Of a stretch of DNA of 64,000 nucleotides, positions 8,605 to 55,520 are shown one piece after another. Positions within the stretch are counted from its first letter, which is position 1. Each line of letters opens with the position of its first letter. The position numbers and the translations under genes are program-made. The notes under the pieces were generated by a model. It was not told where the DNA came from and did no database searches. It was given only the letters and a program-made list of their open reading frames with translations. Origin of the DNA: Ruditapes philippinarum (Eukaryota); NCBI RefSeq assembly GCF_026571515.1, contig NW_026856902.1:1-64000 (forward strand), written 5' to 3'.

Positions 8605-11600
8605 ATGATGCTCAAAGTTGCATACTTAATTGGAATTATATGTACAATCGCGTGGTGCGAGTGTCCACCGCCGAGGAAACATTTCTGTTTTCCGGAACAT
8701 TGGCAAAGTGATTTAAGCGCTGTAAACGTGTCGAGTGATGGACACGGAAAAGTGCAGATAAGTCAAGTATGTATATTGTTTGAAAAATAGATATATAATT
8801 GAATGCTTTTTTTTAGAAAAAAAAGACAATAAATTTAGAGCAAGTTATATTACATTTTGTTTAGCGGAAACTATTGTAGATTTCATCGGTTTTAAAACTG
8901 TTATATAACTATTAAACAATCGTTTCAAGTAAAATATTTTTTTATTTTGTAACAACTTATCCGCTCTAAGTGGTCACCGTCATTTGTTGAACAACAAGGA
9001 TACATTTGCCTTTCATCAAAGTCATCATTAGTGTCACCTTTTTATTTCTTTTCTCTACCATGTCGCTGTTTTCTATTATCCTATCCAATCTTTTTTGCTT
9101 CATTTATTGTACTCTCATCTCTTATTCTTTATCGTGCACTTCCGTCTTTATCTTGCCATTACGTTTTAATGAGTATATTAAAGAGCCTTTGTTCTCTATA
9201 AATTCTTCGAGGGTTTATTCATAATTATTTTTTTTATTCTTAGTTGTTTTTTTTATTTAAAGACGGAGAGGGACTTAGATTCATTTTCTAATGCTCTGCT
9301 CCTCACTGTCATAAAAATGTTATTTTTCCGTGCTATTTTTAAATGCCAATACATAAACTTCATCATGGCACCTCACATGATCAAAGAGGAACACTGGTTT
9401 GTATCCTGATTAAGCGGCACGTTTTGAAAATGTTTGCAATGCTTTTCATTTGCGATAACCTAGCCGGGCTAAAAGGCCAGCGTCATTCCAACTGTTGTAC
9501 TACATGGTTTTGCAGACATATTTTCATTATAAGTCTTTCATTGCTTTCTTTATCTATGCACATTTCATAATATTCTCGATGAGAAAATAGCAAATGTTCT
9601 TTATGCCTGATTCGAATTAATTCAGTGGAATTGATTACCGCATTTAACTTAGATCATGATGTCTTTTTGTTAAGTTTATAGCGAAGCGAAACGATAAATA
9701 ATCTTTCGTGTTGTTTCCAATGAACAATTAAAACATGTACTCGTATTGTTCAATAAAGACATAAAGGGTCTGTAGTTATGGTTTATTTTCAAGATGGTAA
9801 AACCTTTTTTTAATCTACAGGAAGCAGGTCGTATTTATGTTGACCGAACAGTCCACAAAATGCGTATGGATATAGTCCTACCGTCTGGAGAGCTGACCTA
9901 TCTGGCTCTCTTTAAACAGGTAAGATATGCTCATAACAATTCCAAGCTGGTCAAGCGGTTATAAAAGTAGGTTCTGAGTTCTGTCTGGATTTATAGACAG
10001 TATTTCATTTAGCCAATGAATATTGAAATACCTGAGATTTGAATTCAGGTATCTTACAAAAAACAAAACGGAGCGACATATAAGGAATCACCTCTCTATC
10101 GAATGTCTGTATGTCCGTCGTTTACAAAACTTGTCCGGATCTACTTACATAAAGTTAAGTACCACGTCTCGCTGTGCATATTGACGGCATTATAAGAATC
10201 ACTGATTTTTGTCAGAGTTATGGCCCTTTTATAATTTTTTATTTTTGAGATTTCACCGAAGTACTTTTCTTATATCTTTTGATGAAATTTGAATGAAATG
10301 TTACAAGACTGATTCGTTCCTCAAGTACTTGCGAACGTTTAACTGGTTTACTGGTTGAATGAATTTTGACTGGGAAATTGCCTTTGAATAAAAATGCGTT
10401 CTTATCTGCTAATGAGTTGTGTGTCTCTTGCTACACAGTAGCTGCAACATGCAATTGGCTATCATGGGGCGACACATGTGATCACTGATCGCTCTTGTTG
10501 AATCTGTATATAAAAATGCATCAGAGCAGCTGAAAATCATTTAAGTCAACGTCTATGTTATAATTAAAAAATAGCGACATTGAAAGCAGGAAACTAAATA
10601 TAAAAAATGGATAAAAAGAAGAAAGATAGTAATTTAACAACAAAAAGGAGTATGCCTTCATACAAAAGATAGATGATTGTAAAATTTGTTTAAGCATCTG
10701 CCACATGTGTATGCTAATGATAGAAAAGCCCTGCACGATTTTAAAATATATAATATCATTTTCTTGTTCATATTGCCTTTCTTTCAGAAAGTCCTATACG
10801 TTATCTTGAATGGTAAGAACTGCACAAAAATTCATATTGGAAAGGAAATGAAGTGGTGCACTCCAGGTAATTGAAATTTATTGCAATAACTAGCTCTTTG
10901 AAATAAATTTGTGAACATTGATAAACTCTGTGCAACAAATAGTTAGTTAGTTATGTTACTAGATTAATTTATTCTAGCTTTTAGAAGATAAATCCAAGAT
11001 GAACATATATTTCTAGTTTCACTTCCAGCTCCCAAAAGCGATTTGATTTCATGCTTGAAACATTAATATGAGTCAGATTTAAAAGCCAGAAATTTGAGTT
11101 CTGACCCTTTTTTGAGTTCAACATCTTATGATTAATTTTTATAAGGTAGTTCTGAATTTCAAGTAAACGCTAAAAGGCCAATGTTAACCCCTGCCGAATA
11201 TTGGAGGTACTTGCGTAATTTAGCGTTAATTGATATATATTGATATGTTATTAAGTATCTTAATCTTGTCACATAGCATTGCTAGCTCTTTGGTTTTCAC
11301 GAAACTACCTTCTTTGAAATGATTTTCGATTAGAGATGTGTTATAAGTCAAAGTAAACTTGTAATTTGATTTTCTTTTCACCGAAATTTTGACGTCCAAA
11401 CCAAATAGAAGCCAATTTGATGAAACTTATTCAATGTTGTATTGAAAATAAGATATATCGCTAGTTACAAGTAAAGTAAAAAGTATTGATACTTGCAGAA
11501 TTGCCAGCAACAATTCACATTTCTTTAGCTGTTTGATAATTCGACTACATAACTTAAGTTTTGTGAACAATAATTTCTTGATGTATCACGGTTAAAAACT

Positions 11601-13684
11601 TTGCTTTATTTGTATGGTTTGTTTTCCGATTGTAACAAATTTTGTCAAATCTTTGCGCCACCTAACCGGCTCTCCTGGAAAATTAACCAGACTACTAATA
11701 TCCCATGATGTCTGAAACAGCGATGTGAGCAAACGACCATTAAACTATATTTCAATGATAAATTGTGACTGACGGATATTCGCCTCGTCCGAGAATCGAT
11801 CTAGCGAACCTTGGATTGCAAACTTAAGATGTTCTGCCTAATGAGCTAAGCGAACGGGCCAGTAGTACAAAATTACAGCTTAAATACAATGTTGTAGAAA
11901 CACCCGTACAGATAAGACAAACAAACGATTTTCTTTTAAATTAATACATCAGTTGTTGTTGTTTTATCTTATAAATGCTCTGAAATTGTTCAGTTACATC
12001 CTGGTCTACATGTTTACCGAGTCAAAACGAGTCGTGTCACGACAAAACCAACATAATGGGTTTGCGACCAACATGGATCCAGACCAGCCTGCGCATCCGC
12101 GCAGTCTGATCAGGATCCATGCTGTTCGCTTTTAAACCTTTTAACAAGTAGAGAAACTGATAGCGAACAGCATGGAATGAGTTGATCACATGTTTATGCT
12201 GTGCATGCAAGTTAAAATGTTTATTTTTGTTTTTGCCTGCAGATAATGCAAATGTCTCTAAACCGTATCGTCTTGGGTACAAACCAAGTATCAGTGTGGT
12301 GGACTTTGAGTATTATTTCTCCGGTATGAAATTCGTGCTTAGTGCTTCCGGCAAATCTCCGGTTTCGTTTAGGATGTTTGCAACAGAGTCTGGAGGTATG
12401 ATATATACACTCACGGAATAAAACTAGTATTTTCTTAAGTCTGTTTATATTTCATCGTTAGAATTAGGTAGAGTAATTCTAAATGAGTCACAGTTCTAGA
12501 CTTAAATGTAATTGTCAACATAACTATAATTTATGTTGTTGACTTCATTGCACATAATTGTGTATAATCAGTAAAATGTTCTAAAATTCCAAAAAACTAA
12601 TGTTATATTTCTTTACATTGTCTCAACATTTTTGTTTTTGAAAATTAATATATGCTAATCTTTAAGTGACAAAATGTGATATTTGCAGCGTTTTCGGCAT
12701 GGGTAACTACATTCTTTCAGAACTACCTACCGATAAAACCGAATCCAAAAGTCTTCATCGTCCCGAAAATATGTAAACCGCACAACGAGGTATGAACAGT
12801 ATAAATATTTTTTTTCTTGTATTATTCATTGGATAAGAGCAGTCACATTGTGGCAGGTCACCTTTTATGATATAAAGAAACTTATTTTCCTTGTAGACCT
12901 TAACCATGTCAATTACAGACAACTTTAACAGATATTGTACGAATAAACAAGCCCATGTATCGATAATTTAACATAGTATAGAAGTATGTTTCATAAATGA
13001 GTTATATCCAATCCATCTCGTCAGAGTCAAATATCCTTAGTTATGGAATATGGTCGATGAAAGAAATCAGTTACTGTGTTTGCCACTGATCAACTATGAA
13101 AATTTAAGAAGGAAACCCTCTTTTAATTCCTTTAGACCCCATATAGTTTCATATTGGGTCTGTGAAAACCTTATAATCAATATTCTTTATCCCGTGTTCA
13201 TTACTCGTCACCAAAAGGATAATTGAACAGATGATACATTAAAATCAAGATTAAGCCTACGACATAAAACACAATGTTGTTAAAAATAATAGCTATTTTA
13301 AATGTACATGTATATGAATAACTCCGTGAAACATTCTTTTCTGATAGGAAACATTTACAAACATTTAGTTCGTTTCCAAATTATGCAATTGTTTAGTGAA
13401 CTTTCAACTCGGACTGTCCTTTATCAATTATCACAGTAATATATAAACAATATAAGGTTATTGCATATGACATAGTTAATGATCACACCCTATAAATTTA
13501 ACATACGAGGCTGACTCTCTACTAGTAAGTCAGCTTTTCAACTTTGATATCAATCAAAATTTTCGGCGAAATTAAAGATTTAATTATTTCATATCTTTCT
13601 TTACAATTGCAGGAAAACGATGACGCATGGATGACATTGGGTCAAAGACCGATCTGGGAAATGATGACAGAACAAGAAAACTAG
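8605..13684 (+). CDS. Ependymin-related (EPDR-like) secreted protein, paralogue 1 (221 aa)
   Basis: join(8605-8766,9821-9919,10788-10866,12243-12395,12689-12789,13613-13684). All introns are GT-AG, phases 0,0,1,1,0, with a continuous ORF. Hydrophobic signal peptide, then FCFPEHW, YVDRTVHKMR, YLALFKQKVLYVILNGKNC, WCTP, YRLG, FQNYLPIKPNPKVFIVPKIC, i.e. the ependymin family motif order. Confidence 0.85.
10065..10499 (+). mobile_element. Probable Helentron-associated/DINE-like non-autonomous element relic in EPDR-1 intron 2
   Basis: Short (tgtc/gtcc)-type microsatellite near the 5' end, internal gagttatggcccttt and terminal gctcttgtt, an architecture recalled from mollusc HINE-type repeats. Confidence 0.4.
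12029..12175. mobile_element. Truncated copy of the palindromic MITE in EPDR-1 intron 3
   Basis: Left arm and loop only. Other partial copies at about 4778-4837, 14396-14490 and 63927-64000. Confidence 0.75.
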
Positions 13685-17424: not shown

Positions 17425-20400
17425 ATGATGCTGAAAGGATTTTGTCTTCTTGTCTTGGTGACTGTTGTCCACTGTAAGGCAAAGAAGTGCTGCTTCCCAC
17501 AAAACTGGCAGTTACGAGAATCATCGATAAGTGCTTACGCTAACAACAAAACAAAGGAATTACAAATGGTAACATATATTTATTTTTACATTATATTACA
17601 TTGTTTAATGGCATTCTTTGTTCTTTATTTTCACTCATGACATATGAATATGATACAAGTACCTACTTATATTGTAATTTGCACTTATGCATAAGTTTCA
17701 TGTATTGAAATATGCAGAATGCTAAAAATAAAATCACAAGTAGGCATATAGATAATCATGTACAATGTTAAGCATTTTTGCAGTGCTAAAATTCAAATTG
17801 CAAACAAACATGAATCTAGGCTCATCCGTTGATTTCTTTGAGTATTTCATTTTCTCATTCAGTTCACCGTTGACATATTCTTTGACAGTGTGGAACAGAA
17901 AATAAGACAAGATTTCTTTACGTCTAAAGATAATTTAACAATACTTGAGCTCTACAATGCGGTAAGTAAACATAAATTGTTAATTTCGTTTATTTATTTG
18001 TTTTTCTCTAATCATCGATACATTTACTTTATTTTTATTGTATTTAAAGTCACAAGGTTAAGGCCAGGTGGTAAATTTCCAGCTTTTCTTCTGGGAGAGA
18101 CCTTCAGGTTTTGCATCAAATACGAGCTTTCACCTAAAAAAACAAAACAAACAAAAACCGATGCAAGGTGGCTGGATAATGCCATAAAATGAAAGAATTC
18201 GAAGTCTCTGATGTCATGATATGTGAATGAGCCCTTGCATTAGAAATTTTTAACAATAAAAATAATTGCGTCTTTAATTGTGTGAACAATTAATTGTCCT
18301 TGTAACTTCATACTGTAATGGTATCTAAACAGAATACAGGACGTGCAATTTATAAATTTGTTCAAATACAATATAACTACATTTGTATTATAAACGTTTA
18401 ATTAAGGGGTTAAAATGCGAGTAATTTATTGAAAATTAATCTTTTTTGTTTTCCTATCACATTGTTAAGATTTATGTCATTTCCGATAACACATACTTCG
18501 ATGTCTGTTTTGATTTTTAACCATCATAAAAACCGTACGTACAAACATTTTCTCGTCTTTAATATTTGATATTATTATTTCTTACAGCATGTTGGTTTCA
18601 AGATTTTAAACAATAAAAAGTGCACACTCTTTGAGCCAGGACATTTTCCACCGACACCAATTTGCATCCCTGGTAAGAACATTTCTCTTAAATATCCGAA
18701 ACTAAAAAAGTCTTATTACATATACTTCAAAATGAACCGTATTTCTTACTTTTAAAGTACCGAATGAACTTCCAACGTAAGCACAATACGATCATTATTT
18801 GATCTAATTTTTATAATTTTTCAGAAGTACAAAAATGCATATAAATATCCCTATCATACTCTAAGTACATATATTTTAATGCAGTACAACATACTATTCA
18901 TTTTGGATGTTTGTCTAATTATATGTTTGTCCCTATAAGGCCGCATTAAACAATGATGTTGTTATAAATCGTTGAGTACAATATTGATTCAATTACGTTC
19001 ATAGCTGCAAAACCAAACTTAAATTAGACTCGGATACTGTCCTCCTATGTGCAAAACCAAACTTAAATTAGACTCGGATACTGTCCTCCTATGTGCAAAA
19101 CCAAACTTAAATTAGACTCGGATACTGTCCTCCTATGTGCAAAACCAAACTTAAATTAGACTCGGATACTGTCCTCCTATGTGCAAAACCAAACTTAAAT
19201 TAGACTCGGATACTGTCCTCCTATGTGCAAAACCAAACTTAAATTAGACTCGGATACTGTCCTCCTATGTGCAAAACCAAACTTAAATTAGACTCGGATA
19301 CTGTCCTCCTATGTGCAAAACCAAACTTAAATTAGACTCGGATACTGTCCTCCTATGTGCAAAACCAAACTTAAATTAGACTCGGATACTGTCCTCCTAT
19401 GTGCAAAACCAAACTTAAATTAGACTCGGATACTGTCCTCCTATGTGCAAAACCAAACTTAAATTAAACTTTGATACTGTCCTCCTATGTGCAAAACCAA
19501 ACTTAAATTAGACTCGGATACTGTCCTCCTATGTGCAAAACCAAACTTAAATTAAACTTTGATACTGTCCTCCTATGTGCAAAACCAAACTTAAATTAAA
19601 CTTTGATACTGTCCTCCTATGTAGATTCTCATCTGGTACTCAACAATGCATAATAACTATAATTAACAAGAAGGATTGTCCCAAGATAAAAAAAAACAAA
19701 AACAAAAGTGGTCCACTTTTAAGATAACAAAGTAGTAAGCTGGCATGCTTTTATCCTTGTAGTTGATGCATGTAACAAATCCAAAGGAAGTTATTATGTA
19801 TTGTACTTGAAAAAATACTTTGAATTGTCAAAAGTTTCAAAAAATTCTACAATAGATACATGGAAAAGGGTCGACCAATACAGACTCGGACTCAAACCAA
19901 GCATTAACGTTGCCGAGTACGGATACAGTGCAAAAGTCTCCACTTACGTCGGCGTAACTGACAACTGTGTTCCGGTCAGCGTAACGTCATTTGGATTTCC
20001 AACCACAGGTACACTTTTACAATAATTACAAAAATATTATCATGAGCAATTTATAAATGTTTTAAATATAAAGAAACAAAAGAATTAACGAAACGACAAA
20101 ACAATTCCATTATTAAAATGTTTGTCAGCTACCTGATGATATGGTTTTCAAGATACGTAAATAAGAAACTCGAAAAATCTTCAGAGGTTTTTGTAATTAT
20201 ATAGTTATTATTTTTTTAATTATTTACACTAAGACTGGTTTTTATATAAAGTAAAGAAGCTTTGTATTGTTCTAATAATAAAGGATGACCATGAATCATT
20301 TTGATGATGTTTCACATTCGATACTATGCCATATTGTTTCAGGTACAATGTCCCTGTATGCAGCTAGTTTCGAAAACTATCTACCAGATATACCAGATCC

Positions 20401-20720
20401 ATCAGTGTTCCATGTTCCTGCAATCTGCAAACATGCCTTGAGGGTAAATATTGCAACAAACAATAGTATACTGTATAACCTTTTTCTGGATCGTATAACA
20501 GAGTGTTTTTGTTGCTTGATTTGACAATTATATATAGCGTTACTTAATTATTTCTTATCGTCAATAATGTCAACGCAAATTGTAACTGATAACATACACT
20601 TTCCTCCATATCGTAATAAAAAGAAAGATGAATTTAAAATTTCTTTTACAGGACTACGAATTCATTAAAGAACCATTGCACGAAAAGATGTTCTGGAGAG
20701 AAATGTTTGCCGAATATTGA
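17425..20720 (+). CDS. Ependymin-related (EPDR-like) secreted protein, paralogue 2 (216 aa)
   Basis: join(17425-17568,17863-17961,18588-18672,19856-20008,20343-20443,20652-20720). GT-AG, phases 0,0,1,1,0. Signal peptide, CCFPQNW, FDSVEQKIR, KKC, ICIP, YRLG, TDNCVPV, FENYLPDIPDPSVFHVPAIC (compare the ependymin C-terminal motif GIxDPSVFxPPxxC). Confidence 0.9.
19007..19622 (+). repeat. Minisatellite, 14 x 44 bp, in intron 3 of EPDR-2
   Basis: Unit gcaaaaccaaacttaaattagactcggatactgtcctcctatgt. Copies 11, 13 and 14 carry the variant aaactttgat. Confidence 0.95.
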
Positions 20721-36400: not shown

Positions 36401-39400
36401 GCCAACAATACTCTGTAGACAGCAACCAATTCCCTCCAAGTGGAAGATTTGGTGCGTTCTGTTTCTGACCAGACGCCATGGGATACCCCATTTAAGGTAT
36501 TAACCTCATACCCAGCGTAAGCTGTGTCACTTGCATCAGAATACACTACTTTTGTACAGATATGAGATCGTTCAAGATCTTTCTTGTCTATACACGACAA
36601 GTAACCTTTCCAGAATAAAAGCTGTTCATAACTCTCTGCACTGAGTAAAATGCGCTCATCCCAATACCGTGCATTTAATACATCTAAAGTTAAATATCTA
36701 GTCATAATTTGAGATATATGCCCAATGACTGTCGTCATAGAAATAAACTGACCAACTGCACTAGTAACTTTTCTTACGGGAACTTTAAACTTCTTGTCAA
36801 TAAGGCCAATCAAAAAATCAATAGTTTCTTGTGCTTTTAACAATCTTCGATCGGGAATGGAAATAGTACCATTGATTGTATTCAAATCACACCCAAGATA
36901 CTCTATATCTGTACATCTTATTCGCTACTCTCAAACAAAGAAAATTACATGTACATGTTGTAAGTAAAAATGTTCGACGATTAAGTTTAAGATTACTTTG
37001 CATTAGGTCACTGATTTTTTTAACAAGAAAACGAAAATCCACGAATTAAAAAACCCACGAAAATGCCCGTTTTGATAAAACCACGAAATTTCATGCCCAC
37101 GAATATAAGTGAATTTGCAATGTTGGACAAGTTTGCAGTTCTTTTATTCGAAATGCAAATAATAATAAAACCTTGCTCATCTGTTGGTAACTTTGTATGG
37201 AAAATGCTTAAAACATGCTTCATTTATACTTTCAGTTTACCATTGATATATTCTTTGACAGCGTGGAGAAAAAAATAAGGCAAGATACATTTTCCTCCAA
37301 GGATAATGTTACACTTCTTCAGCTATTCAATGCGGTAAGTAAACACGAACCATGGCAATATATTTATTTGTTGTTTTTTCTCCAACATACGAACGGTTAC
37401 TATATTTTTGGTTGAGTTACATGTCACACCAAATGGTGAGTAGTGGAGAAAAACTTCGTGTACCCCTTTATCCTTAGGACAGCCAGCCTTCCAAAATTTA
37501 CCTGGATTCCGTCATAAAAATAAGTTATTCCAAAGTCCCTGACATTGGTAATTGTACACCAGATATGTAAATGAACCAATTAGAATTTATTAACGTGAAC
37601 AAATAATAGCGTCTGTGATGATATAATTATCTATTTTACCGTTTTACTTCACGCTGTTGAGATTTGTAAAATGTGCACACAATGTGTAAACAATCTGCAT
37701 ACCAGTGCAGACACAAACATTATATGTGTGTACAAACCTTCCTTGAGTTTAACACTTGATATTATCATTTCTTTCAGAACGTTGGTTTCAGGATTTTGAA
37801 CAATAGACAATGTACACTGTTTGAACCAGGCCATTTTCCGCCGGAACCGATTTGCATCCCGGGTGAGAAAATCTCTCTTATGAAAACAAATCTTATAACG
37901 GATAACAAACAAACCGTATTATTTCACACTTAATAAAATGTTATCAATAAACTTGTTTCACTGTATGCACAATATGAACTGCTTATACAAATTATTATTT
38001 TTTCTTTCTTAGAGTCCTGAAAATCTGTGAAAAAGAAGTCTTTAATTATAATCGTTGACAGTAACATTGACTCTGTTGGACCCGTTCGCAGCCGCAAAAC
38101 TTAACCCATATTAGACTTGGCAAGCACCTCGTCATATATAGGTTTGACAACTGAGTACTTTATATTGTACTCATCAACGCAAAATAACCTCACGTTTTTT
38201 TGTTGTTTTTTTTCTTTTGTTTTTTTGTTTGTTAAATAGAAACGTCAAAAAGTACAAAAATATAATTTGAGAAGCGGATATACAGAAAATAAGCTTACAT
38301 GTCACATCCTTCGTAATGATTCATTGAATGAGTTACCATTAGCAAAGGTTTGTTAAATTTCTACAATAGATACATGGAAAAGATACGACGAATACAGACT
38401 CGGATTCAAGCCCAGCATTAATGTTGCTGATTACGGACACAGTGAACATTCCGTATCCGTTTACGTCAGCTTAACTGACAACTGTACTCCTGTCAGCATA
38501 ACATCATTTGGATTCCCGAGTAAAGGTAACGTCTTACAATAATTTTAACGCAATTTATAAATGGTTAAATATTATAAAGAAAAAAATAGCATTAGCGGAC
38601 CAACAAATCATTTTCATTATATTGTCTTCCATGTAAAATGGATTTTGACACACTTGAAAAACCTTCTAAGCATAGCATTGTTCAATCAAGTATACTCCTT
38701 TTTTGATTGATACCTTCAAACGTGTTATTCTAAGCTAAATATTTTCTCGAATATTCAAAGAGTTATTTTATTTGTTTTTAAACTATGTTTCTGGAGTAAT
38801 AGTGATTCTACATAGTTACTGTTTACGTAATTCTACATCATAATTGTTTACATAATTCTCCATAATAGCTATTTACATACATCATCATACAAGGTAAAAA
38901 AACAAGTTGACATTTTGATTTTCTACTTGAAAGGCAAGGAAAAAATGTGTTTAATGTTTTCCTCTTACAAATGAAGTTCTTGTTCGAGTTTCATCACAGC
39001 GATAATGTTAAATAGGAAATACCTCATACACTCTGCCATCGAGTCATCATAAAAAGTAAGAGGTGTAACAAGAATTAAAATTGTTACCTAACTGCTGGCT
39101 GCTTAGGGGCGTCTATGGCCAAGCTTTTTACGTCAAACAACTTGTCCCTCAACGCTGTGAGTTCGAATTCCTCAGTGGAACAAAAAAGTCGATAACGTCA
39201 CATTCGATATTATTTGTTCGTTTCAGACACAATGACCCTGTTTGCAGCACATTTTGAAAACTATTTACCAGATATACCGGATCCATCGGTGTTCCATGTT
39301 CCTGCAATCTGCAAACATGCATTGAGGGTAAATATTGAACGAGATTTTCATTGTAGATTTGCATCAAACAATATTACACTGTATAATCTCTTAATTGTTC

Positions 39401-41067
39401 TGTTTACTTGAACAATGTTTTTGCTTGATTTAATGAATATGAATAACCGTAATCAGAGCTGCATCAGTACTAAGGGTGTAGTACTTAAGTACCAGTACCA
39501 GTACTTGGCAAATTATGCAGTACCATTACCAGTACCAGTACTAGATTTTAGCTCGGTACTGCAGTACCAGTACTTTTTTTGGTGAAGTAATTAAGTATCA
39601 GTACCATTACTTTTATATATTCATCAAAGTTTGAATAAATACAGTGTCAAACAAATAATTGCAAATATTATTCAGCAAAGAAATAAAATCATAATTTACT
39701 TTAAAGCTGCATGCCTCCAGATGACCCAAAATATTTCAAGAAAATTAAACTTGGAAAAAAATTACTAAAACTTTGAGAAAAGTAAACAAATTAAAGATTC
39801 AAGTGATAATTTATATCTTATGTGCAATTAATGACTGTATTTTGTAGTATTTATCACTATATTTCTACTGCGTTACTAACGCAGTAGGGGCTATTTATGC
39901 ATGTTTTGACCTCTTTTTGGTAATTTACGTGGATTTTAAGTGCTGATTGTAATGTGTCAAGTACTTTCTTTGTTCATTTAACAATATTTTACCTTTAAAT
40001 ACATTTTCAAAATTTTCATGAAAATTAGGATGAATCTGGAGGCATGCTGCTTTAAAGTTAACATAACATATTTACAACTTTATAGTTTTAACATACTTTT
40101 TACAAACAATATTTACAACATATAATATTCATGTCATATCTAATTGTTTAGTAACCAGTCAACTGTAAATACAATGCAAACATCTTTCATTTAAAACACA
40201 ACAGTCTTTTGTTGCCTTTCACACCTTCACACCTCTGTTCAATTTATACCAAAGTAAATAACAACTTTTTATGGTGCAAACAATAGGATAAAACCCCACC
40301 AGTTAAAATTTTATATAAAATTTTGAGTGGTGGGGTTTTAACTGGTGGGGTTTTGTCCATCTTCCAATTCCACTTTTTTCACTTGAAATGGGATTTTTTT
40401 AGAATAGAAGAAATTAATTAGTGTTTATTTTGCTCTTTTACTAGTAAATACAAAGTAATAAAAGATTTTAATAAGGATATTTTAGGGTAAAGAGTTATTG
40501 AGTCTGTTTATCTTAATTTAATTTTTACTTAAAGTCTTTGGTGCTTTTTATGATGAATACTATGTTAACATTTGAAGGAATATTGCAGCAAATTATCTTT
40601 AGATTTGATAACTTACTGTTTCACAAAAATAAAATGTAGTTAATGTAATTTACAGCTTTATTTAATGAGAAAAATTGATGTTATTTTTAATTTTATCAAA
40701 ACCAAAAGTACTGGGTAATGCAGTAGCAGTACCACTTTTTAAGACAGTAATGCAGTACCAGTACCAGTAGTAGCAAAATTTTGTAAGAGTAATTCAGTAT
40801 CAGTACCAGTACTTGCAAAATCGCTGCAGTACGTACTGCAGTACCAGTACCAGTACCAGTAATGCAGCTCTGACCGTAATTTATACTCTCTGTTCATCAT
40901 TAATATCAGCGTGAACTTGATCTAATATGTTATCATTTGAATCATATCGTAACATCAAGACATATAAATTGATACTCATTGTAAACTTTCTGTTACAGGA
41001 CTACGAACTCACAAAAGAACCATTGCATGAAAAGATGTTCTGGAGAGAAATGTTTGCCGAATATTGA
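30463..41067 (+). CDS. Ependymin-related (EPDR-like) secreted protein, paralogue 3 (217 aa), closest to paralogue 2
   Basis: join(30463-30606,37236-37334,37778-37862,38370-38525,39227-39327,40999-41067). GT-AG, phases 0,0,1,1,0. The ORF stays intact despite TE-expanded introns 1 and 5. Motifs CCFPQNW, RQC, ICIP, TDNCTPV, DIPDPSVFHVPAIC. Confidence 0.9.
31123..33062. mobile_element. Non-autonomous TTAA-targeting DNA transposon (Kolobok/piggyBac-like), ~1.9 kb
   Basis: TTAA|GGTGACAAC (31119-31131) and GTTGTCACC|TTAA (33054-33066): a 9-bp TIR with TTAA flanks and no transposase ORF. Confidence 0.65.
33449..34001. mobile_element. Foldback/palindromic MITE with internal ~22-bp tandem subrepeats and a 6-bp TSD
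   Basis: Long TIRs (tacggaatgccgttagggccat ... atggccctaacggcattccgta). Arms are built of (gttttcatcatcgtactatcgc)-like units. Direct CAATTC flanks lie at 33443-33448 and 34002-34007. Confidence 0.85.
34496..35480 (-). pseudogene. Frameshifted tyrosine recombinase of the DIRS-like element
   Basis: Pieces in different frames: LLRNSRA..FQKW (35305-35480), YAGFLRSSEL (34965-35204), SKTD..CPV..HSLRSG..HGRW..Y (34496-34957). Together they give the R-K-HxxR-W-Y catalytic set, interrupted by frameshifts. Confidence 0.88.
35737..36885 (-). CDS. DIRS-like pol fragment: RT C-terminus, RNase H and DNA adenine methyltransferase-like domain
   Basis: RNase H motifs YSDAS, SSTWRELVAV, WFTDNQ, EWVPRTQNEKADFLSR. 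Downstream DWFAS...FYSRFWNP...IDAF...W...FVPP...GVLVIPCW...FWP is the MT-like domain typical of DIRS1-type elements. Confidence 0.88.
   Translation of the reverse strand: MNTINGTISIPDRRLLKAQETIDFLIGLIDKKFKVPVRKVTSAVGQFISMTTVIGHISQIMTRYLTLDVLNARYWDERILLSAESYEQLLFWKGYLSCIDKKDLERSHICTKVVYSDASDTAYAGYEVNTLNGVSHGVWSETERTKSSTWRELVAVYRVLLALGHFLKSQCVKWFTDNQGVKVIVLKGSMRQELQEIFQYCMKNAISLEVEWVPRTQNEKADFLSRLSDFDDWGISFDILQMITDRFGQLDVDWFASYYNAKLTKFYSRFWNPDCFGIDAFSESWEGQFGLFVPPISVIHRVIMKLACDHAHGVLVIPCWKSALFWPFICPNGCFIKEVVDWFDLPTERHFYIKCKNGKGIFGNTDLKFRMLALKLQFTQGK
39454..40872. mobile_element. Non-autonomous hAT-like DNA transposon in intron 5 of EPDR-3
   Basis: 11-bp TIR CAGAGCTGCAT, perfect 8-bp TSD ACCGTAAT (39446-39453, 40873-40880) and subterminal (CAGTAC)n arrays. 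It is absent from the homologous 208-bp intron of EPDR-2. Confidence 0.88.
39705..40051. mobile_element. TTAA-flanked MITE (Kolobok-like) nested in the hAT-like element
   Basis: TTAA|AGCTGCATGCCTCCAGAT ... ATCTGGAGGCATGCTGCT|TTAA. Related copies at 8033-8384 and 48556-48876. Confidence 0.75.
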
Positions 41068-45548: not shown

Positions 45549-48251
45549 ATGAGTACTTCACTGCGAACATCATTATCTCTCGCCATTGTGTTATTGATGT
45601 TGAGAGCATATCATGCAGATGTATGCTGTTTTCCAAGCCAATTTGAATGTCATGCCAATCATTTCATGCCAAATGAAAAAGCAAAAATATATAGGCCTTA
45701 TATAGAGGTAATTTAGTTCCAAAATTTAAAATCTGATTTCAAAAAGAAATATAACAAAAAAAAAAAAAAAAAAACGTTTAAATGAAAATTTTAAGAATGA
45801 TTAATATACATGGAATTTTGATTGCGAGTATACTCCTTGCGGAGTGATGCAATTACTTCAGATGATGATGATGAATTTTATATATCACCAGTACAAAAGT
45901 CACTTTTCTGTATAAATGTGAAAAACTGAAATGAATTGAGCAAGATATATAACTATACCTGAAAAAAATCGATGACATGTATTCTTCAAAATTTTACAGA
46001 GAGATTTTGACATATCGTTTGACTGGACCAAAAAACGCTTGAGACAGTACTCTCCAGCTACAGGTTATGTAGAATTGCTGTTTTTCGAAAAGGTATTATT
46101 AAAAAAAAAAATATCGTAACTACATTGTTTAGACAAGCCACTGTTCTCCGATTTTATTCAAAGGTTCATTATTAACAGTAGGTTTGGTAAATAAAGTGAA
46201 GTATACATACTGTAAGATTATTTATATATTATACAGAAAATTATAATTATTTAATATATATTAAAAGAATATACACAAAGATAACAATATAGTTCTTATA
46301 ATAAAAATAGAACGTTGGTATAGCTTATATTAGATTTATCTTCAACAATTATTAATGAAACTTGTAGACAGAATTGCTATCTTAAACTTTAATGTTTTGC
46401 AATTTTCTTAAGCCTAAATCATTTAAATGTTTTGATTGGCAGGCTGTCGTTTATTTCATCCGGAATTCAACTTGCAGTATCAAACTACTTGAGCCTCCTA
46501 AAATTGGAGCATTCTGTGTTCCAGGTATGTATGAAAAAAATGAATTTCATGACATTTGTCAGAGAGTATCTTTGTAAATAAGCTTTCTAAACATGTCTAT
46601 CTCACCAGCACCTTCATCAGCAAAACATATAAACCACTTTGAAGATCTTCATTAACGCCATCCGTTGTTGCAGAATTTTGAATATGTTTTAGCTATTTAA
46701 AATTATATTTGCTCAGTCCATCAAGAACAAAGTCATAGAGTACATTAAAGTTATAATAAGAGTTAATCTTATTGATCTGGTTATATTTTGCAAAAACTAT
46801 TTGCGGATTTAGTCCAGTTTCAATGTTGTTTTTATTCCAGTCCTATTTTTATACAATTAGTTCAATTAATGTATTTCAATTAACGGTGAACTTCATTTAT
46901 TATCGGTAAATTATTGAACTCACTAATATGTAGAGGAAATAATTGATTTTCAGATAATGCTAAACGTATGAAAAGTTACACACTTGGTGTGAAAGAGCAG
47001 ATAAATGTCACTGATTATTTGTATAAAATTGACCAAACGCAGATGTTGCGGACAATTTCTGACAACTGTGTGCCGGTGTTTGATTTAATTTTCCATGCGA
47101 AGTGTAAGCATTATATAACTTATTACTGTACCTTATCAATAAATCTACGTATCTCTTAGCTCCAGCAGATGAGGTGGTTCTCTTTCCTGATGATGTTTTT
47201 ATTTTTTAACACCCGAGGTTAACCAAAATCTTGCCTGTTTTGGCGCCGTATGACCTAAATTGTTTTGGTGCGTTGTGAAACGAAAAAAAAATAGCATGAG
47301 ATTTTGAATTTTGCAATATAAATTGTTTATAATTTATTTTTCAAACTCGTAGAACATGTTTTTTTTATAATAATGAAATAAGGTCTACCTTATGAATCTT
47401 TATCAAAACAAAATTTTATACATTTATGTACAATTTCTTTCTTTCGTGCATTAAATTATTGAGCCAAAAAAAATGTCATATCTTAACCATGAAACAAATA
47501 ATATCTTAAAAGTAAGTTATGATAAGGTAGTATTGCAAATCTTAAATAATGGTATTTTGTATTTAGATACTATGCTTCTTTGAAATTATTGTTTATTATA
47601 TACATGTACTTATATTAACTATTATACACATCTTATCATTTCTTATCATTTTTAAAATATATTCTGAAATATTTTGTTATTCTTCTAGCAAACTTTAAAA
47701 ACTTTAACACAATTTTGGCCACATATCAGAACTTGACTCTTGGAATTAAAGACGAAAAGGTGTTTGATGTACCAAGTTTCTGCAAATCAAGCGCCAAGAA
47801 GGTATTCATTTCCAAATAAGATAGTGATCGTTATCAAATGTTCAAAATATGAAAGTGTCATACTGTCAAAATGTAGCATATAGTAAAAATTGTCTAAGAA
47901 CTATTTTGATCCAAGCAATCCTCAAGATTTTCATTTTGCAAAATAGTTTTTATGGTTCTTATCACATGATTCTAGTTTATTATCTAAGATTATATAAATG
48001 TATTAGGAATATATGTCGTCGGTAACCGACAGTGGTGATTAATCCCGCTTTATCAATCATTAGTCGCACATAACATGTAAATTATTACTTGATCTTGAAT
48101 ATATTTACTGTTTTTAAAATCTTTTGAATTCTTTTGGAGGCATGTAATATTTGGTTGAACTTGTTTTTATCGCTGATGTTTATTCTTTTTATTTTAGGAA
48201 ATAAACTCAAAAGTAGAGGGCACCAGTTTGTTCTGGAATGTCTTTGTTTAA
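45549..48251 (+). CDS. Ependymin-related (EPDR-like) secreted protein, paralogue 4 (216 aa)
   Basis: join(45549-45707,46000-46092,46443-46524,46954-47103,47689-47801,48198-48251). GT-AG, phases 0,0,1,1,0. Signal peptide ending AYHA, then DVCCFPSQFE, SFDWTKKRLR, NSTC, FCVP, YTLG, SDNCVPV, YQNLTLGIKDEKVFDVPSFC. Most of its exons are missed by the ORF track. Confidence 0.9.
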
Positions 48252-50545: not shown

Positions 50546-50782
50546 TGAGCCGCGTCACGACAAAACCAACATAGTGCGTTTGCGACCAGCATGGATCCAG
50601 ACAAACCTGCGCATCTGCGCAGTCTGATCAGGATCCATGCTGTTCGCTTACCAACTCTATTACAAGAAGAGAAACTGATAGCGAACAGCATGGATCCTGC
50701 TCAGTCTGTGCGGATGCGCAGGCTGGTCTGGATCCATGCTGGTAGCAAACGCATTACCTTGGTTTTGCCGTGACGCGGCTCA
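50546..50782. mobile_element. Palindromic ~240-bp MITE (TGAGCCGCG family), full copy
   Basis: Same TIRs and internal sequence as 1692-1934. Confidence 0.85.
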
Positions 50783-51438
50783 TATTACTCAGGGTCGTCA
50801 AACGAATAAGCTGCAGAATCAAACTCATTATGACCTGGTGGAGCAGCTGGCACTCTAAAGATGAACAAAAATCAATCTAAAAGGTAACAACTCTATCACA
50901 ATCTGTGTATCTTTACTAAGATTTTTTAATGACAAATCTAATTATTGAAGCGACCAATGCGTATTCTGTCTGACCACAAGAAAGATTGCTGCCTTCGTAT
51001 ATGGCGACCAAAAGTGTTATGAATTTCAACATATAATGTCCAAGCTCTTACAGTCTTGATGAATGCCTCCTCGCTATGCTAATCTAACTTTTTATATTAG
51101 AAAAAGCTAAACAGTTTTGAAAGGACAATTTTCTATGTAATTTACCAAATATCAGCTTTGCATGGGCTTTAATTTAGCTACGATCTTTCCTTAAAATAGA
51201 CTTCTTGCGATTGAAGTAAACAACTCAATTAAGAAAGGCATACTTTTCAATTTCTGTTAGAATATTTTGGTCACTATTTTGTACAAATAATTTTCAAGAA
51301 GTGTCATGCATAGTGGCACCTATACATAAAAACAATTAGTGACATAAATTTTGCAAGACCCTTGTTTTCAAGCTGTGTTGATTCATAAAGCTAACTACTT
51401 TGTTTAACTTCCGGGAAGTTTACGTAACTTTGAAGGGC

Positions 51439-51543
51439 TATAAATGGAGATGTGTTGGAGTTTATTTAAATAGAAAAAGATAACATTTTAAGAAGTACTT
51501 AATAGCTAAGTGAGCAGTACATTTTAAGTCGATAAAGGTAAGT
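51439..51543 (+). promoter_or_regulatory. Putative TATA box and non-coding first exon of EPDR-5
   Basis: TATAAATG at 51439 and a consensus donor AAG|GTAAGT at 51538. The ATG exon has a TTGCAG acceptor (52474-52479). Confidence 0.45.
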
Positions 51544-52488
51544 CATTAAATATTGTATGTTGTATTGTTATTTTATATCGAATGTTCAACAATGTCTTTC
51601 TTATGATTAGCATTACTGTAACACTGCCATATAAACATTGAACAAAATCAAACACTGTTTTTCTTTTGTGAGAAGGCGTTATCATATACTACATGGGTCT
51701 ATGACAATACTGGTACTATTTTATGGACATTGTTTCACTGCTATATAAAATTGACGGTTTTGTTTTATAGGAAAATTCATTATTTCACAAAGAATTTACT
51801 GACATATTACATTTAACATTATGTCAGAATAATTAAACACCGAGTACGGACTCAGCTTTCATATATCGTTATCAACGAATATGTTCTACATTCGTTTTGA
51901 TCGTTAACTTGCCACCGAAACCTTTTCTAATACTGTACTCTTGATAATGGATAGGTATTGTACATTGCACTTTGTTTTTCTGGCAAAAGTATAAAATAAA
52001 GAGTCATTTGTATAACAAAGCAGAGCAATCGATTAATAAACGGAAAATGTATGTAATACTTTCTGCACAAACGTTAACATTGTATGTAAAAAGGTACTTA
52101 ACAAAGATAGATATATTGATATATTGTCTTCACATTTGAACATGTGGACATGTTCATGTACCATTCAAAGCACATTTAATTCAACAAAATATGGCAAAAT
52201 TACATGAAATGGCAAACAAGAAGAAAGAAAAACTTTAAAAGACAAAGATGATCGTAATTAAGTAATGGAAAGAAATCATGAAATAATAAAGTCAATAGTA
52301 TTTAATATTCGCAAATACTCATATGCTTGCTTTCTTTATAACAATATTTAATACAACAACATAATATCGTATATATGGCAAGTTAATTTAACAAATACGT
52401 ATTATAATTTTGTGACGATTTCACCTATAACACTTTAGACTTGACAAACAATGGTCTACTCGTATAAGACTTATTGCAGGAAACAATC

Positions 52489-55400
52489 ATGGGAATAATC
52501 GTTCCAGTCCGTGACTCATTGCTAGTTATCATACTGTTTGTTATGTGGCCATCATGTCATGCAGATGTTTGCTGTTTTCCAAAACAGCTTGAAGGACAAC
52601 TAAGTATGCTTTATTCAAGAGCGACTGGTTCTGACTTATTTACTGAGGTAATCAATAGATCAAACATAATTTTCTATCTTGTTATTTGCATTTTAAATAG
52701 AATCAGAAAAAATAAATTTCTCTTTCAACCTTTTAATATAATTCTTACAAGATGCATTAATTTTTACCCCAATTTATTGTCATTACACAAAAAATCTTAA
52801 TATTAATCAAAAGCAAAGATTGCATTGAATTCCTTTACATATGATTGAAATGGTGAACTTAAAAGTTCATTGATTTTTTTCAAAATAACATTTTGTCTTC
52901 CTTTACAAAATAGACAAAAATATGATCTAAGTCTACTTTTTGCTTGCTGTTAATATATTTAACAGATAAATATGGATGGTTCGTTCGACTGGACAAATAA
53001 GAGAATACGTGAATATATTCCTGCCACTGGTTATTTACAATTACTCTTCTTCGGAAAGGTTTGCATAATTATCTAACGTTAAAGTGTTACGTCTATTTTT
53101 TGTGTGTTATCTTATTTTAATTTGTTTGAAAGTGTCAAAATGTTTATGTTTAATTTTTCATGTCTAAGGTAAATCTATAGTATTGTCATTGCTTTTCAAA
53201 CTGAAAATATAAACGTAAAAGACATTTAATGAATATACAAAATAAACAGTGTAAAATAGTTTCATGTTTTACAGGGAGTTGGCTATTTCATCAAAAATTC
53301 AACCTGCCAGGTGCAAAAACTTTCGCCATTGTCAGACAGCGAGTTTTGTGTCCCTGGTAATATTTTTCCTATTTTATCTAAAAGAAAATTTTCATCATTA
53401 TTCTTGTAATTGTCATCGTTCCATATCTGCCATTGACATCATATCATTATTTTTCATTTATTGACTTTCATTGCCTTACTTAGCAATTGTGAAATCTAGT
53501 CTTATTTCTTTCTGCAAAACTTTATTGTTGTTTGATTCCTTCATGTCATAAGAACAATAATTAATCAATTTCAGATCCTTATGATTGTTTTTGTGTGTGT
53601 TTGACAAACTGAGGTTAAGTACACATAATTCTCTTATTAGAAAAAAAACTTTTGCTTAATAAAGTGACTGTAGGTAGCGTTGTTTCTTTAACAGGGACAA
53701 CAATTATCTTATGATTATAATTTGGTCGGTTTGGAAGTGTTTGAGCATGTCTCGTGTTGAAGTCATCAAAGTCAAATACAATGTATTATTTTTTTTATAT
53801 AAAAGACAGAGCTAAACGTATGAAGAGTTACAAAATTGGACTGAAAGAGAAGATGACCTTTACTGACTACGTGTTTTCACCAGTGAAGAAGGGAAACATA
53901 GGTCAACAAATACGGACAATTACTGATGATTGCGTGCCTGTTGTGGATATCTATTTCATGAACCGTAAGTTTTATACTAACATTATCTTATGTAATGCAC
54001 TTGAAGGTACAATATCATTATAAGCACAAAACATATCTTACTAGGATGTTTCAATGTTTCTACTTTGTTAAATGTATTAGATATGATACTAACAGATATT
54101 ATACAAGTTAAAAAAGTTTTTTTTCTCTATCATTCTAGGGAACAACTACTTTGAAATGGTGACGTATTCATATCAGAATATAACACCTGGTATCAAAGAC
54201 GAGAAGGTGTTTAATGTACCTAGTTTCTGTAAATCAAGTGTTCAGAGGGTAAGAATGATAAACATTTTGTATACAAAATGTATATGTCACTACTTTCAAC
54301 TCTATAAATAAAGAATAAGAAATAAAAAATCATGTGTTTGTTTAGAACAAATGTCTTGTTTGGTGTTCTGCTAGGCTCCTTGCCGGTGGTCCCGTGTTGC
54401 TGAGTTGTGTTTATTGAATTCCGCCCTTCCTTATTGATCCTGTTTTTAACATTTAGTTCATTTTTTTAAAATTATGTTGTGTTCAATAATAGAAATAAAT
54501 AAAATAAAGGACCTTCACAATGAAAACTAACTCATTCTGGAAAGACAGGTGCATTTGCATAACAGTTGTTTAAATTTAAATTAGACTTCTATGTTTCTTA
54601 CTAATTGCCAATTTTACAGTTATCAAATTCTTATGTTGAAACATGCTTTAGCCGGTACGGGTAGGGTGGGGTTGAATATTGGGGAAGGTGAGCAGTAGCT
54701 TGCACTTTCCAATACCGTCCGTATCAGGCCACACCAAGCCTGCAACACTTCAGTTTGGTGGTTTTATGTGTGTTTGGGATTCCGTTTTCTCTATGTTAGT
54801 TATGGTATGAAATTTTGAAAAATACACACGTGAATTTGTGTAAGTACTGTGTACCTTATGACACTTACATGACATAATCATTAGTTTTAGGGGTTTTAAA
54901 TGTGTCTCATTTTGCCTGAAATAACATTAAGTGAAAATTAACTTAGTTATAAAGTAAAACTAGAACTAGAAATGATCATTGGAATTAAACAGTTGCTGAT
55001 AGTCCTGTGTTTGGGGTGGGTTAATTGAATGCCGCACTTCTTTGTTGATTTTGTATTATTTTCATATTTTATTTTCAATAGAATTTTTTAATGAAAAACG
55101 GCCTTTTTTCTTTATGTTTCGACGAATTTAAATGTTTTTACTTGCAAATATGCATGTAACTGAAATACACTGTATACAATTGTTGTTTTATTTTGCGGAA
55201 AATCATGCCTTCTATTTGGTATCGTGCATGACTTTTAATGAACTGCTTTATTTATTATTTGCTGCACTGTTGTGCTTATTTCCGGTGGCGAAGCGTTCAT
55301 TGAATGTAACTCTTCCTTGTTGATATTGTTTTCATGTTTTGTAAGCGGGAGCGTTTATTGAATGCCTCCTTTCCTTATTGATCTTTGGTTTTCAAATTCT

Positions 55401-55520
55401 GTTTAAAACATATATGTTCAATGACTTTATTTGTCTTTTTTTCAGATGGGCAACACACATGCTAAAGAGAAAACAGTTTTCTGGAACTCGTTTGGTTTCA
55501 AGGATAATTCTTTAGTGTAG
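52489..55520 (+). CDS. Ependymin-related (EPDR-like) secreted protein, paralogue 5 (225 aa), closest to paralogue 4
   Basis: join(52489-52647,52966-53058,53275-53356,53806-53964,54139-54248,55446-55520). GT-AG, phases 0,0,1,1,0. Signal peptide ending SCHA, then DVCCFPKQLEG, SFDWTNKRIR, NSTC, FCVP, YKIG, TDDCVPV, YQNITPGIKDEKVFNVPSFC. Confidence 0.9.

What the first reader, a model, noticed from the sequence alone, without database searches (positions are those of the whole stretch)
8605..55520. Hidden five-gene tandem array of divergent ependymin-related secreted proteins
Seen: five intact head-to-tail genes, none apparent as a whole in the ORF track. Each has a signal peptide, six coding exons, phases 0,0,1,1,0 and near-identical exon sizes. 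They form three lineages: paralogue 1, pair 2/3 and pair 4/5. Established: EPDR proteins have a LolA-like fold with a hydrophobic lipid-binding groove, and the family is expanded in molluscs (shell matrix, secretions) and echinoderms (secreted cues). Inference: this is a lineage-specific, diversified battery of secreted hydrophobic-ligand carriers, kept intact despite heavy TE insertion, and possibly unannotated or labelled uncharacterized.
Basis: partly seen in the sequence, partly recalled or inferred. Interest (0 to 1): 0.8.

Follow-up and report, generated by a model that had tools for sequence, protein, structure and literature searches.

The report
Five tandem ependymin-related genes in clam

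Summary
Window 8605-55520 (+) holds five genes. Each has six coding exons, canonical AG/GT splice sites, intron phases 0,0,1,1,0 and near-identical exon sizes. The proteins are 216-225 aa, counted from the conserved start codon.

The exon-wise translations match five NCBI proteins of Ruditapes philippinarum residue for residue. These are LOC132748078, -079, -080, -082 and -081, all named "uncharacterized protein". All five pass the Pfam Ependymin cut-off (33.0-58.8 bits against 32.3).

AlphaFold models of g2 and g1 find EPDR1 (human, frog, mouse) and the sponge carotenoprotein EPD-BCP1 first, then VioE and LolA/LolB.

Transcript contigs show the g4 E4-E5-E6 and g5 E1-E2-E3-E4 junctions exactly as modelled.

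There are three lineages: g1; g2/g3 (79% identical, dN/dS 0.21); g4/g5 (50% identical, dN/dS 0.26). g2-g5 carry the six-cysteine "profile 2" of McDougall et al. 2018. g1 and its Mercenaria orthologue lack both partners of one disulfide.

The function, as secreted carriers of hydrophobic ligands, is inferred from the fold and was not tested.

Tandem EPDR expansions in molluscs are already published, so these are new members of a known kind and of low interest. Other notes of this scan report further EPDR loci elsewhere in the same genome.

The parts
8605..8766 (+). g1 (LOC132748078) coding exon 1: hydrophobic N-terminus, then FCFP motif
   Evidence: matches P0018 residues 13-66
9821..9919 (+). 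g1 exon 2
10788..10866 (+). g1 exon 3 (two Cys)
12243..12395 (+). g1 exon 4; lacks the Cys of the D-x-C-x-P motif
12689..12789 (+). g1 exon 5 (VF-x-VP-x-x-C)
13613..13684 (+). g1 exon 6, tail with I-W, includes stop
   Evidence: isoform X1, P0018
17425..17568 (+). g2 (LOC132748079) exon 1: hydrophobic N-terminus, CCFP
   Evidence: P0002 exact
17863..17961 (+). g2 exon 2
18588..18672 (+). g2 exon 3
19856..20008 (+). g2 exon 4 (DNCVPV)
20343..20443 (+). g2 exon 5
   Evidence: (PF00811 13.7 bits)
20652..20720 (+). g2 exon 6, tail with F-W, includes stop
30463..30606 (+). g3 (LOC132748080) exon 1
   Evidence: P0023 residues 48-95
37236..37334 (+). g3 exon 2 (after the 6.6-kb intron 1)
37778..37862 (+). 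g3 exon 3
38370..38525 (+). g3 exon 4
39227..39327 (+). g3 exon 5
40999..41067 (+). g3 exon 6, includes stop
45549..45707 (+). g4 (LOC132748082) exon 1
   Evidence: P0001 exact
46000..46092 (+). g4 exon 2
46443..46524 (+). g4 exon 3
46954..47103 (+). g4 exon 4
   Evidence: its 3' end is the loose end joined before 47689 in X1 and X3 contigs
47689..47801 (+). g4 exon 5
   Evidence: (PF00811 22.5 bits, E 1.4e-4)
48198..48251 (+). g4 exon 6, includes stop
   Evidence: joint 47801|48198, GT..AG, contig depth 1428 (X1) and 119 (X3)
52489..52647 (+). g5 (LOC132748081) exon 1
   Evidence: P0029 exact
52966..53058 (+). g5 exon 2
   Evidence: joint 52647|52966 in X1 and X3 contigs and one X23 read
53275..53356 (+). 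g5 exon 3
   Evidence: joint 53058|53275 in X1 and X3 contigs and one X23 read
53806..53964 (+). g5 exon 4
   Evidence: the X3 contig's loose end behind 53356 reads the start of this exon
54139..54248 (+). g5 exon 5
   Evidence: (PF00811 22.8 bits, E 1.1e-4)
55446..55520 (+). g5 exon 6, includes stop
   Evidence: also in the intron-free ORF P0028
27010..27165 (+). Decayed exon-1-like relic of the g4/g5 lineage, with two stops and a frameshift: remnant of a sixth copy
   Evidence: tblastn with P0028, E 5e-8; frames; no further exons found up to 30400
34496..36885 (-). Retroelement fragment in g3 intron 1: one ORF with a motif I read as tyrosine-recombinase-like and one 382-aa ORF; DIRS-like by my reading
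   Evidence: ORFs; weak Dam-methylase match, E 0.0016; motif reading from knowledge of DIRS elements

Best explanation
This is a tandem array of five functional ependymin-related (EPDR, Pfam PF00811) genes of the Manila clam Ruditapes philippinarum. Each gene encodes a protein of about 216-225 aa. The N-terminus is hydrophobic and looks like a signal peptide. A CCFP motif follows (FCFP in g1). The core is an 11-stranded, strongly curved beta-sheet of the LolA/EPDR1 type, stapled by disulfides. There are 2-3 N-glycosylation sequons, and a separate last mini-exon encodes a short tail with a conserved aromatic-Trp pair. Shown here: gene structure, family membership, predicted fold, purifying selection on both young pairs, and transcription with correct splicing for g4 and g5. 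Inferred: the proteins enter the secretory pathway and act as soluble binders or carriers of hydrophobic molecules (lipids, sterols or pigments) in the groove of the curved sheet, as human EPDR1 and sponge EPD-BCP1 do. The three old lineages and the younger duplicates probably differ in ligand or tissue. The array grew by repeated tandem duplication and left one dead exon-1 relic.
For: Exon models with canonical sites and identical phases. Exact agreement with RefSeq proteins XP_060593604.1, XP_060593606.1, XP_060593608.1, XP_060593610.1 and XP_060593609.1. Pfam Ependymin: g1 33.0, g2 40.2, g3 37.1, g4 58.8 and g5 allele 56.6 bits, against a cut-off of 32.3. Exon 5 alone hits PF00811 positions 102-128, and an exon-5 profile finds only EPDR1 chains at the top of the PDB list. 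P0001 against the PDB finds only EPDR1, E 0.005. AlphaFold models: g2 pLDDT 83.7, g1 77.6. Foldseek top hits are EPDR1 and EPD-BCP1 at E 3e-10 to 6e-9 with TM up to 0.73, then VioE and LolA/LolB. In P0002 the cysteines sit at 22, 23, 93, 107, 147 and 189 and a proline at 149. This matches 'profile 2' (23, 24, 94, 107, 148, 186; Pro150) of PMC6280359. dN/dS is 0.21 for g2/g3 and 0.26 for g4/g5. Spliced transcript contigs are seen for g4 and g5, with near-zero depth over the g5 introns. An intron-free 225-aa ORF on a 1088-nt Logan contig matches g5. Ligand binding by the fold is documented in PMC6363788 (EPDR1, hydrophobic groove) and PMC10470211 (EPD-BCP1, carotenoids).
Against: No ligand, tissue or localisation was tested. 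No signal-peptide predictor was available, and RefSeq models of g1 and g3 carry N-terminal extensions (12 and 47 aa) that would bury the signal if they are real. g1 is barely over the Pfam cut-off (33.0 against 32.3) and lacks the otherwise conserved Cys23/Cys148 pair. Transcription of g1-g3 was not checked with reads here. Depth in the two raw RNA runs was very low (0-3x over the exons). P0002 alone finds no EPDR1 by sequence in the PDB.
Confidence: 0.9

Rival explanations
1. The proteins are shell-matrix or mantle biomineralisation components, structural or calcium-binding, rather than soluble ligand carriers.
For: EPDRs occur in mollusc shell proteomes and mantle transcriptomes (PMC6280359 background; PMC3374290 and PMC6003135 listed). 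An EPDR gene lies in a cockle shell-colour QTL window (PMC9551087).
Against: The sequences have no repetitive, acidic or low-complexity regions of the kind typical of matrix proteins. The fold is a closed ligand-binding groove. The tissue of the expressing runs is unknown.
Confidence: 0.1
2. The paralogue pairs form heterodimers that bind carotenoids or other pigments and contribute to mantle or shell colour, as the sponge EPD-BCP1 heterodimer does.
For: EPD-BCP1 (8i34) is the best structural match of g1 and among the best of g2. EPD-BCP1 is a heterodimer of two EPDR chains with the pigments at the interface (PMC10470211). The array holds two co-located pairs.
Against: The structural match is to the shared family fold, at only 16-21% identity. 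There is no evidence of pigment binding, dimerisation or co-expression. Contig depths of g4 and g5 go in opposite directions in X1 and X3, though depth is a poor measure of expression.
Confidence: 0.06
3. They are lysosomal lipid-processing cofactors like vertebrate EPDR1, not extracellular proteins.
For: Human EPDR1 is lysosomal as well as secreted and has the same fold (PMC6363788).
Against: The vertebrate-specific C88/C222 link is absent, and the tails here have no Cys. The relation to vertebrate EPDR1 is distant (17-24% identity). Five diversified copies fit poorly with a housekeeping role.
Confidence: 0.1
4. One or more copies are decaying pseudogenes that only look intact.
For: A dead exon-1 relic at 27010-27165 shows that copies do die here. 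g1 has lost two conserved cysteines. g3 carries a 6.6-kb intron with a retroelement.
Against: All five reading frames are open with canonical splice sites. dN/dS is 0.21-0.26. The g1 cysteine pattern is shared with its Mercenaria orthologue P0021, so it is old and maintained. g4 and g5 are transcribed and spliced.
Confidence: 0.05

Closest known systems
Ependymin-related proteins (EPDR, Pfam PF00811), cysteine 'profile 2' group of McDougall et al. 2018 (PMC6280359)
   Same: Length of about 213 aa, hydrophobic N-terminus, Cys at alignment positions 23, 24, 94, 107, 148 and 186, Pro150, and a Pfam domain above the cut-off. Tandem clusters and independent expansions in molluscs are described in that paper.
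   Different: g1 and its Mercenaria orthologue lack Cys23 and Cys148 and have extra N-terminal Cys. This is close to, but not the same as, the paper's profile 3, which keeps 23 and lacks 24. g1-g3 score only just above the Pfam cut-off, and NCBI's naming did not recognise any of the five.
Vertebrate EPDR1 / MERP (PDB 6e7o, 6e8n, 6jld, 6jla, 6jl9; PMC6363788)
   Same: The same LolA-type curved-sheet fold by model comparison (E about 1e-9 to 1e-10). The C-terminal motif (I/L)-K-D-(P/E)-x-V-F-x-x-P-S-x-C is shared. The two core disulfides are conserved in g2-g5.
   Different: Identity is 17-24%. The MERP-specific C88-C222 link is absent; instead there is a Cys-free tail with a conserved aromatic-Trp pair, encoded by its own mini-exon. 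Profile-2 cysteines 24 and 107 are extra. Dimerisation and lysosomal targeting are unknown.
Sponge EPD-BCP1 blue carotenoprotein (PDB 8i34; PMC10470211)
   Same: Secreted EPDR glycoprotein. It is the best structural match of g1 (TM 0.69) and gives the highest TM-score for g2 (0.73).
   Different: Identity is 16-21%. EPD-BCP1 binds astaxanthin and mytiloxanthin at a heterodimer interface; nothing of the kind is shown for the clam proteins.
Bacterial LolA/LolB and VioE (LolA superfamily)
   Same: Fold-level similarity (Foldseek E 1e-4 to 1e-6), with a hydrophobic cavity in a curved sheet.
   Different: No detectable sequence relation. The bacterial proteins have no disulfides or glycosylation, and their cellular context is different.

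Membership tests
EPDR / Ependymin (PF00811) | Pfam Ependymin domain at or above the gathering score (32.3 bits) | tested here: met
   g1 33.0, g2 40.2, g3 37.1, g4 58.8 and g5 (allele P0028) 56.6 bits. The scoring used public proteins whose sequence equals the exon-wise translation of the window.
EPDR / Ependymin (PF00811) | Core cysteines at alignment positions 23, 94 and 186 and Pro150 (PMC6280359) | tested here: met
   Met in g2-g5, where P0002 has C22/C23, C93, C107, C147, P149 and C189. Not met in full by g1: Cys23 and Cys148 are absent, while C94, C107, C186 and Pro150 are present. The paper itself records members that deviate in this way.
EPDR / Ependymin (PF00811) | N-terminal signal peptide (secreted glycoprotein) | tested here: inconclusive
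   A hydrophobic stretch of 12-17 residues follows the conserved Met and ends a few residues before the CCFP motif. It forms a low-confidence helix in the models. There are 2-3 N-x-S/T sequons per protein. No signal-peptide predictor was available.
EPDR / Ependymin (PF00811) | LolA-like curved beta-sheet fold as in solved EPDR1 | tested here: met
   AlphaFold2 models of g2 (pLDDT 83.7) and g1 (77.6) have 11 strands. The top Foldseek PDB hits are EPDR1 and EPD-BCP1, probability 1.00, E 3e-10 to 6e-9. g3-g5 were not modelled.
EPDR / Ependymin (PF00811) | Binding of a hydrophobic ligand in the groove | not testable with these tools
   This needs purified protein. Model coordinates could not be inspected for groove lining.
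Vertebrate MERP/EPDR1 subgroup | Third disulfide C88-C222 tying the C-terminal tail to the core (PMC6363788) | tested here: not met
   The tails encoded by exon 6 contain no Cys in any of the five genes. The genes are therefore EPDRs but not MERP-type.
Mollusc shell-matrix EPDRs | Presence in a shell proteome or mantle-specific expression | not tested
   Run tissues are coded and no proteome data were searched. No paper mentions these LOC identifiers.

The most novel reading that the evidence does not exclude
The co-located paralogue pairs (g2/g3, g4/g5) might work as heterodimeric pigment or lipid carriers of the EPD-BCP1 type. Alternatively, the dedicated last mini-exon follows a basic site (KK, LR or QR at the exon 5/6 boundary in g2-g5) and encodes a conserved aromatic-Trp peptide. 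That tail might act as a removable lid or a released peptide controlling access to the groove. Either would give this EPDR subfamily a defined mechanism, which the family still lacks in molluscs.
Probability: 0.06. Interest if true: 0.55.

Novelty: new member of a known kind. Interest (0 to 1): 0.22.

Why it matters
The result gives a family name, a fold and a validated gene structure to five RefSeq "uncharacterized" clam genes. It shows within one array that a six-cysteine EPDR lineage gave rise to a lineage that lost both partners of one disulfide. This fits the published idea that EPDR cysteine profiles arise repeatedly. Beyond better annotation and a set of candidates for ligand-binding or shell, immune or colour studies in a farmed bivalve, it changes no general picture: tandem EPDR expansion in molluscs is already documented.

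Tried and rejected
1. My first model of g4 exon 6 was an acceptor at 49289 giving only 'M-stop', which would have made g4 truncated. Transcript contigs rejected it (joint 47801|48198), and there is no DNA similarity between that site and g5 exon 6.

2. Pfam on the exon-1 ORFs gave only noise.

3. PDB profile searches with exon 3 and exon 4 alignments gave no EPDR hit. Only the exon 5 profile did.

4. phmmer of P0002 (g2) against the PDB found no EPDR1. The fold comparison was needed for that lineage.

5. I looked for further exons of the relic copy between 21000 and 30400. None had convincing scores.

7. No paper mentions the five LOC identifiers.

Exons were searched one by one. Full-length work used public proteins returned by the tools, which were then shown exon by exon to equal the window's translation.

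Full report
**What is in the sequence**

The window is AT-rich (about 31% G+C). Between 8605 and 55520 its ORF list shows only short open frames. Five of them begin with a hydrophobic N-terminus followed by CCFP, or FCFP in the first.

A translated self-comparison of all + strand open segments finds paralogous pieces in five colinear sets, at E down to 1e-32. Reading the DNA around each piece gave five six-exon models. Every acceptor is a pyrimidine-rich ..AG, every donor is GT, and the phases are 0,0,1,1,0 throughout. Exon sizes differ by at most 18 nt between genes.

The coding sequence totals about 3.3 kb of the 46.9-kb span.

**Correction of one exon by transcripts**

For g4 I first took an acceptor at 49289, which would have ended the protein after one codon. 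Laying two transcriptome-like Logan contig sets (X1, X3) and two raw RNA runs on 47600-53400 gave a different answer.

- A GT..AG joint 47801|48198 appears at contig depth 1428 (X1) and 119 (X3).
- A loose end before 47689 reads the last 30 nt of g4 exon 4.

So g4 exon 6 is 48198-48251 and encodes a 17-aa tail with the same F-W motif as its paralogues.

The same call shows the g5 joints 52647|52966 and 53058|53275 in both contig sets, with one raw read each in X23. An X3 contig runs through exons 1-2-3 and continues into the first letters of exon 4. Depth over the g5 introns is near zero against 42-286 over the exons. X1 and X3 therefore behave as RNA, although their record does not say so. 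Only g4 and g5 were tested this way, because one read-laying run was allowed.

**Identity with public models**

A profile of the five exon-4 peptides was searched against 1.84 billion representative proteins. It returned 17 hits.

Exact look-ups name the organism, Ruditapes philippinarum, and the genes:

| Gene | NCBI locus | Protein(s) |
|---|---|---|
| g1 | LOC132748078 | isoform X1 XP_060593604.1, 233 aa; isoform X2 reads through intron 5 |
| g2 | LOC132748079 | XP_060593606.1 and XP_060593607.1 |
| g3 | LOC132748080 | XP_060593608.1 |
| g4 | LOC132748082 | XP_060593610.1 and XP_060593611.1 |
| g5 | LOC132748081 | XP_060593609.1 |

All are called "uncharacterized protein". A script confirmed that each exon peptide of the window occurs, in order and to the last residue, in the corresponding public protein.

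The RefSeq models of g1 and g3 add 12 and 47 N-terminal residues from an upstream exon. All five genes have a splice acceptor 5-9 nt before the conserved ATG, so a short leader exon is likely. The extensions may be artefacts that would bury the signal sequence.

**Family and fold**

- Single exons give only faint Pfam signals. Exon 5 of g4 and g5 scores 22.5 and 22.8 bits to Ependymin positions 102-128. A whole-genome six-frame scan barely sees the window.
- The full-length public proteins all pass the PF00811 cut-off of 32.3 bits: g1 33.0, g2 40.2, g3 37.1, g4 58.8, and the g5 allele P0028 56.6.
- An exon-5 profile puts four EPDR1 entries at the top of the PDB list. P0001 finds only EPDR1 (E 0.005). 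P0002 finds none by sequence.
- AlphaFold2 models built on a 15-16-row family alignment are confident: g2 pLDDT 83.7, g1 77.6, each with 11 strands.
- Foldseek ranks human, frog and mouse EPDR1 and sponge EPD-BCP1 first (E 3e-10 to 6e-9, TM up to 0.73). VioE and many LolA/LolB structures follow.

Both fail to refute.

**Cysteines**

McDougall et al. (PMC6280359) define core cysteines at alignment positions 23, 94 and 186. Their "profile 2" adds 24, 107 and 148, and Pro150 is conserved. P0002 has C22, C23, C93, C107, C147, P149 and C189, and g3-g5 follow the same pattern.

g1 has F-C-F-P and no Cys in exon 4, so it lacks positions 23 and 148. Those are the pair proposed to bond with each other; the equivalent in human EPDR1 is C42-C172 (PMC6363788). 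g1 has also gained Cys just before the motif. Its Mercenaria orthologue P0021 shares all of this, so the state is old and maintained rather than decay. This agrees with the scan's separate note s1-813902.

**History**

- Pairwise identity is 79% for g2/g3, 50% for g4/g5 and 26-33% for all other pairs.
- dN/dS is 0.21 for g2/g3 (dS 0.53) and 0.26 for g4/g5 (dS about 1.5, near saturation).
- Between g4 and g5 only the exons still align at DNA level. Between g2 and g3 the intron flanks and an upstream region also align.
- In a maximum-likelihood tree of 15 proteins, g1 pairs with a Mercenaria protein (support 100/97). g2 and g3 group (100/99) with a 59%-identical Logan protein of unknown species, which branches outside the g2/g3 pair (84/87). 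g5 is sister to g4 plus two further R. philippinarum genes on other contigs (LOC132738677 and "ependymin-2-like"), with Mercenaria "ependymin-related protein 1-like" outside.

The three lineages are therefore older than Ruditapes. Only the g4/g5 group is a recent, species-lineage expansion.

A profile search of the whole assembly finds the same subfamily on at least four other contigs (C236, C15807, C10506 and weaker ones). More typical EPDR exons lie on C9375 and elsewhere. A decayed exon-1 copy of the g4/g5 type at 27010-27165, with two stops and a frameshift, marks a lost sixth gene.

**How it most likely works**

Shown: the genes are intact, under purifying selection, of the EPDR family and fold, and at least two are transcribed and correctly spliced.

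Inferred from the family: the proteins enter the secretory pathway and are glycosylated (2-3 sequons each). They hold a hydrophobic molecule in the groove of the curved sheet, as EPDR1 does with lipids (PMC6363788) and EPD-BCP1 with carotenoids (PMC10470211).

The Cys-free tail, with its conserved aromatic-Trp pair and its own mini-exon, replaces the disulfide-tethered tail of vertebrate EPDR1, which forms part of the groove rim. Whether the clam tail acts as a lid is speculation. Ligand, tissue and any hetero-dimerisation are unknown.

**Novelty**

Tandem clusters and independent EPDR expansions in molluscs, including bivalves, are described in PMC6280359. All five genes are in RefSeq, and the protein collection carries a precomputed PF00811 hit for g2, g3 and g4 and for the 90% cluster that holds g5. 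No paper names these loci.

The finding is a correct and careful reading of raw sequence, but biologically these are new members of a known kind. The added value is better annotation and the g1 cysteine story. Other notes of this scan report further EPDR loci on other pieces of the same genome.

**Limits**

- Reads were laid on one stretch only.
- No signal-peptide predictor was available.
- Model coordinates could not be inspected.
- Run tissues are coded.

Noticed in passing
window 27010-27165 (+): A lone decayed exon-1 copy of the g4/g5 lineage lies between g2 and g3. It keeps the ...SACHA / VCC / ...TGSDFLT similarity but has two stop codons and a +1 frameshift. No other exons of that copy were found.
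   Followed up: partly
window 34496-36885 (-), inside g3 intron 1 (30607-37235): Retroelement fragment. One 153-aa ORF has a motif that I read as tyrosine-recombinase-like. One 382-aa ORF has a weak Dam-methylase match (E 0.0016). The combination is typical of DIRS-like elements, and it accounts for the 6.6-kb intron.
   Followed up: partly
window 1723, 4777, 12031, 14399, 16229, 50549, 63927: A short repeat with an open frame reading MDPDQPAH.RSLIRIHAVRL recurs in introns and spacers on both strands. RNA contig depth over the copy at 50510-50703 exceeds 270,000, so the family is very abundant in transcriptomes.
   Followed up: no
window 19006-19622 (g2 intron 3); 33500-33960 (g3 intron 1); 60037-60386: Tandem arrays show up in the self-comparison. 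The first has copies spaced 44 bp apart over about 600 bp.
   Followed up: no
window 8599-8604, 17419-17424, 30457-30462, 45544-45548, 52480-52488: All five genes have a splice acceptor 5-9 nt upstream of the conserved ATG, which implies a leader exon. RefSeq uses upstream exons to add 12 aa (g1) and 47 aa (g3, from the ORF at 29733) in front of the signal-like N-terminus, and these are probably mis-assigned starts. The X1 and X3 contigs of g5 both begin at 52478.
   Followed up: partly
window 2872-3381 (+): The ORF ends with a rhodopsin-type GPCR tail (..NPVIY..F.. motif). This is probably the last exon of a receptor gene upstream of the array. Pfam found nothing on this piece.
   Followed up: partly
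window 63166-63669 (+): An ORF has a weak match to the start of the neurotransmitter-gated ion-channel ligand-binding domain (PF02931, E 0.01). It may be a first exon of a Cys-loop receptor gene downstream of the array.
   Followed up: partly
G000:C9375:49210-71353 and other contigs: A cluster of more typical EPDR genes lies elsewhere in the genome (up to 46.8 bits per exon). There, Pfam positions 16-85 lie in one open frame, so the exon structure differs from the six-exon pattern of this window's subfamily.
   Followed up: no
window 49299-49584: X1 and X3 contigs at depth 566 and 76 skip 284 bp without splice signals (TT..CT) and carry 8-11 mismatches. This is most likely an insertion/deletion difference or a repeat copy from elsewhere, not an intron.
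   Followed up: no
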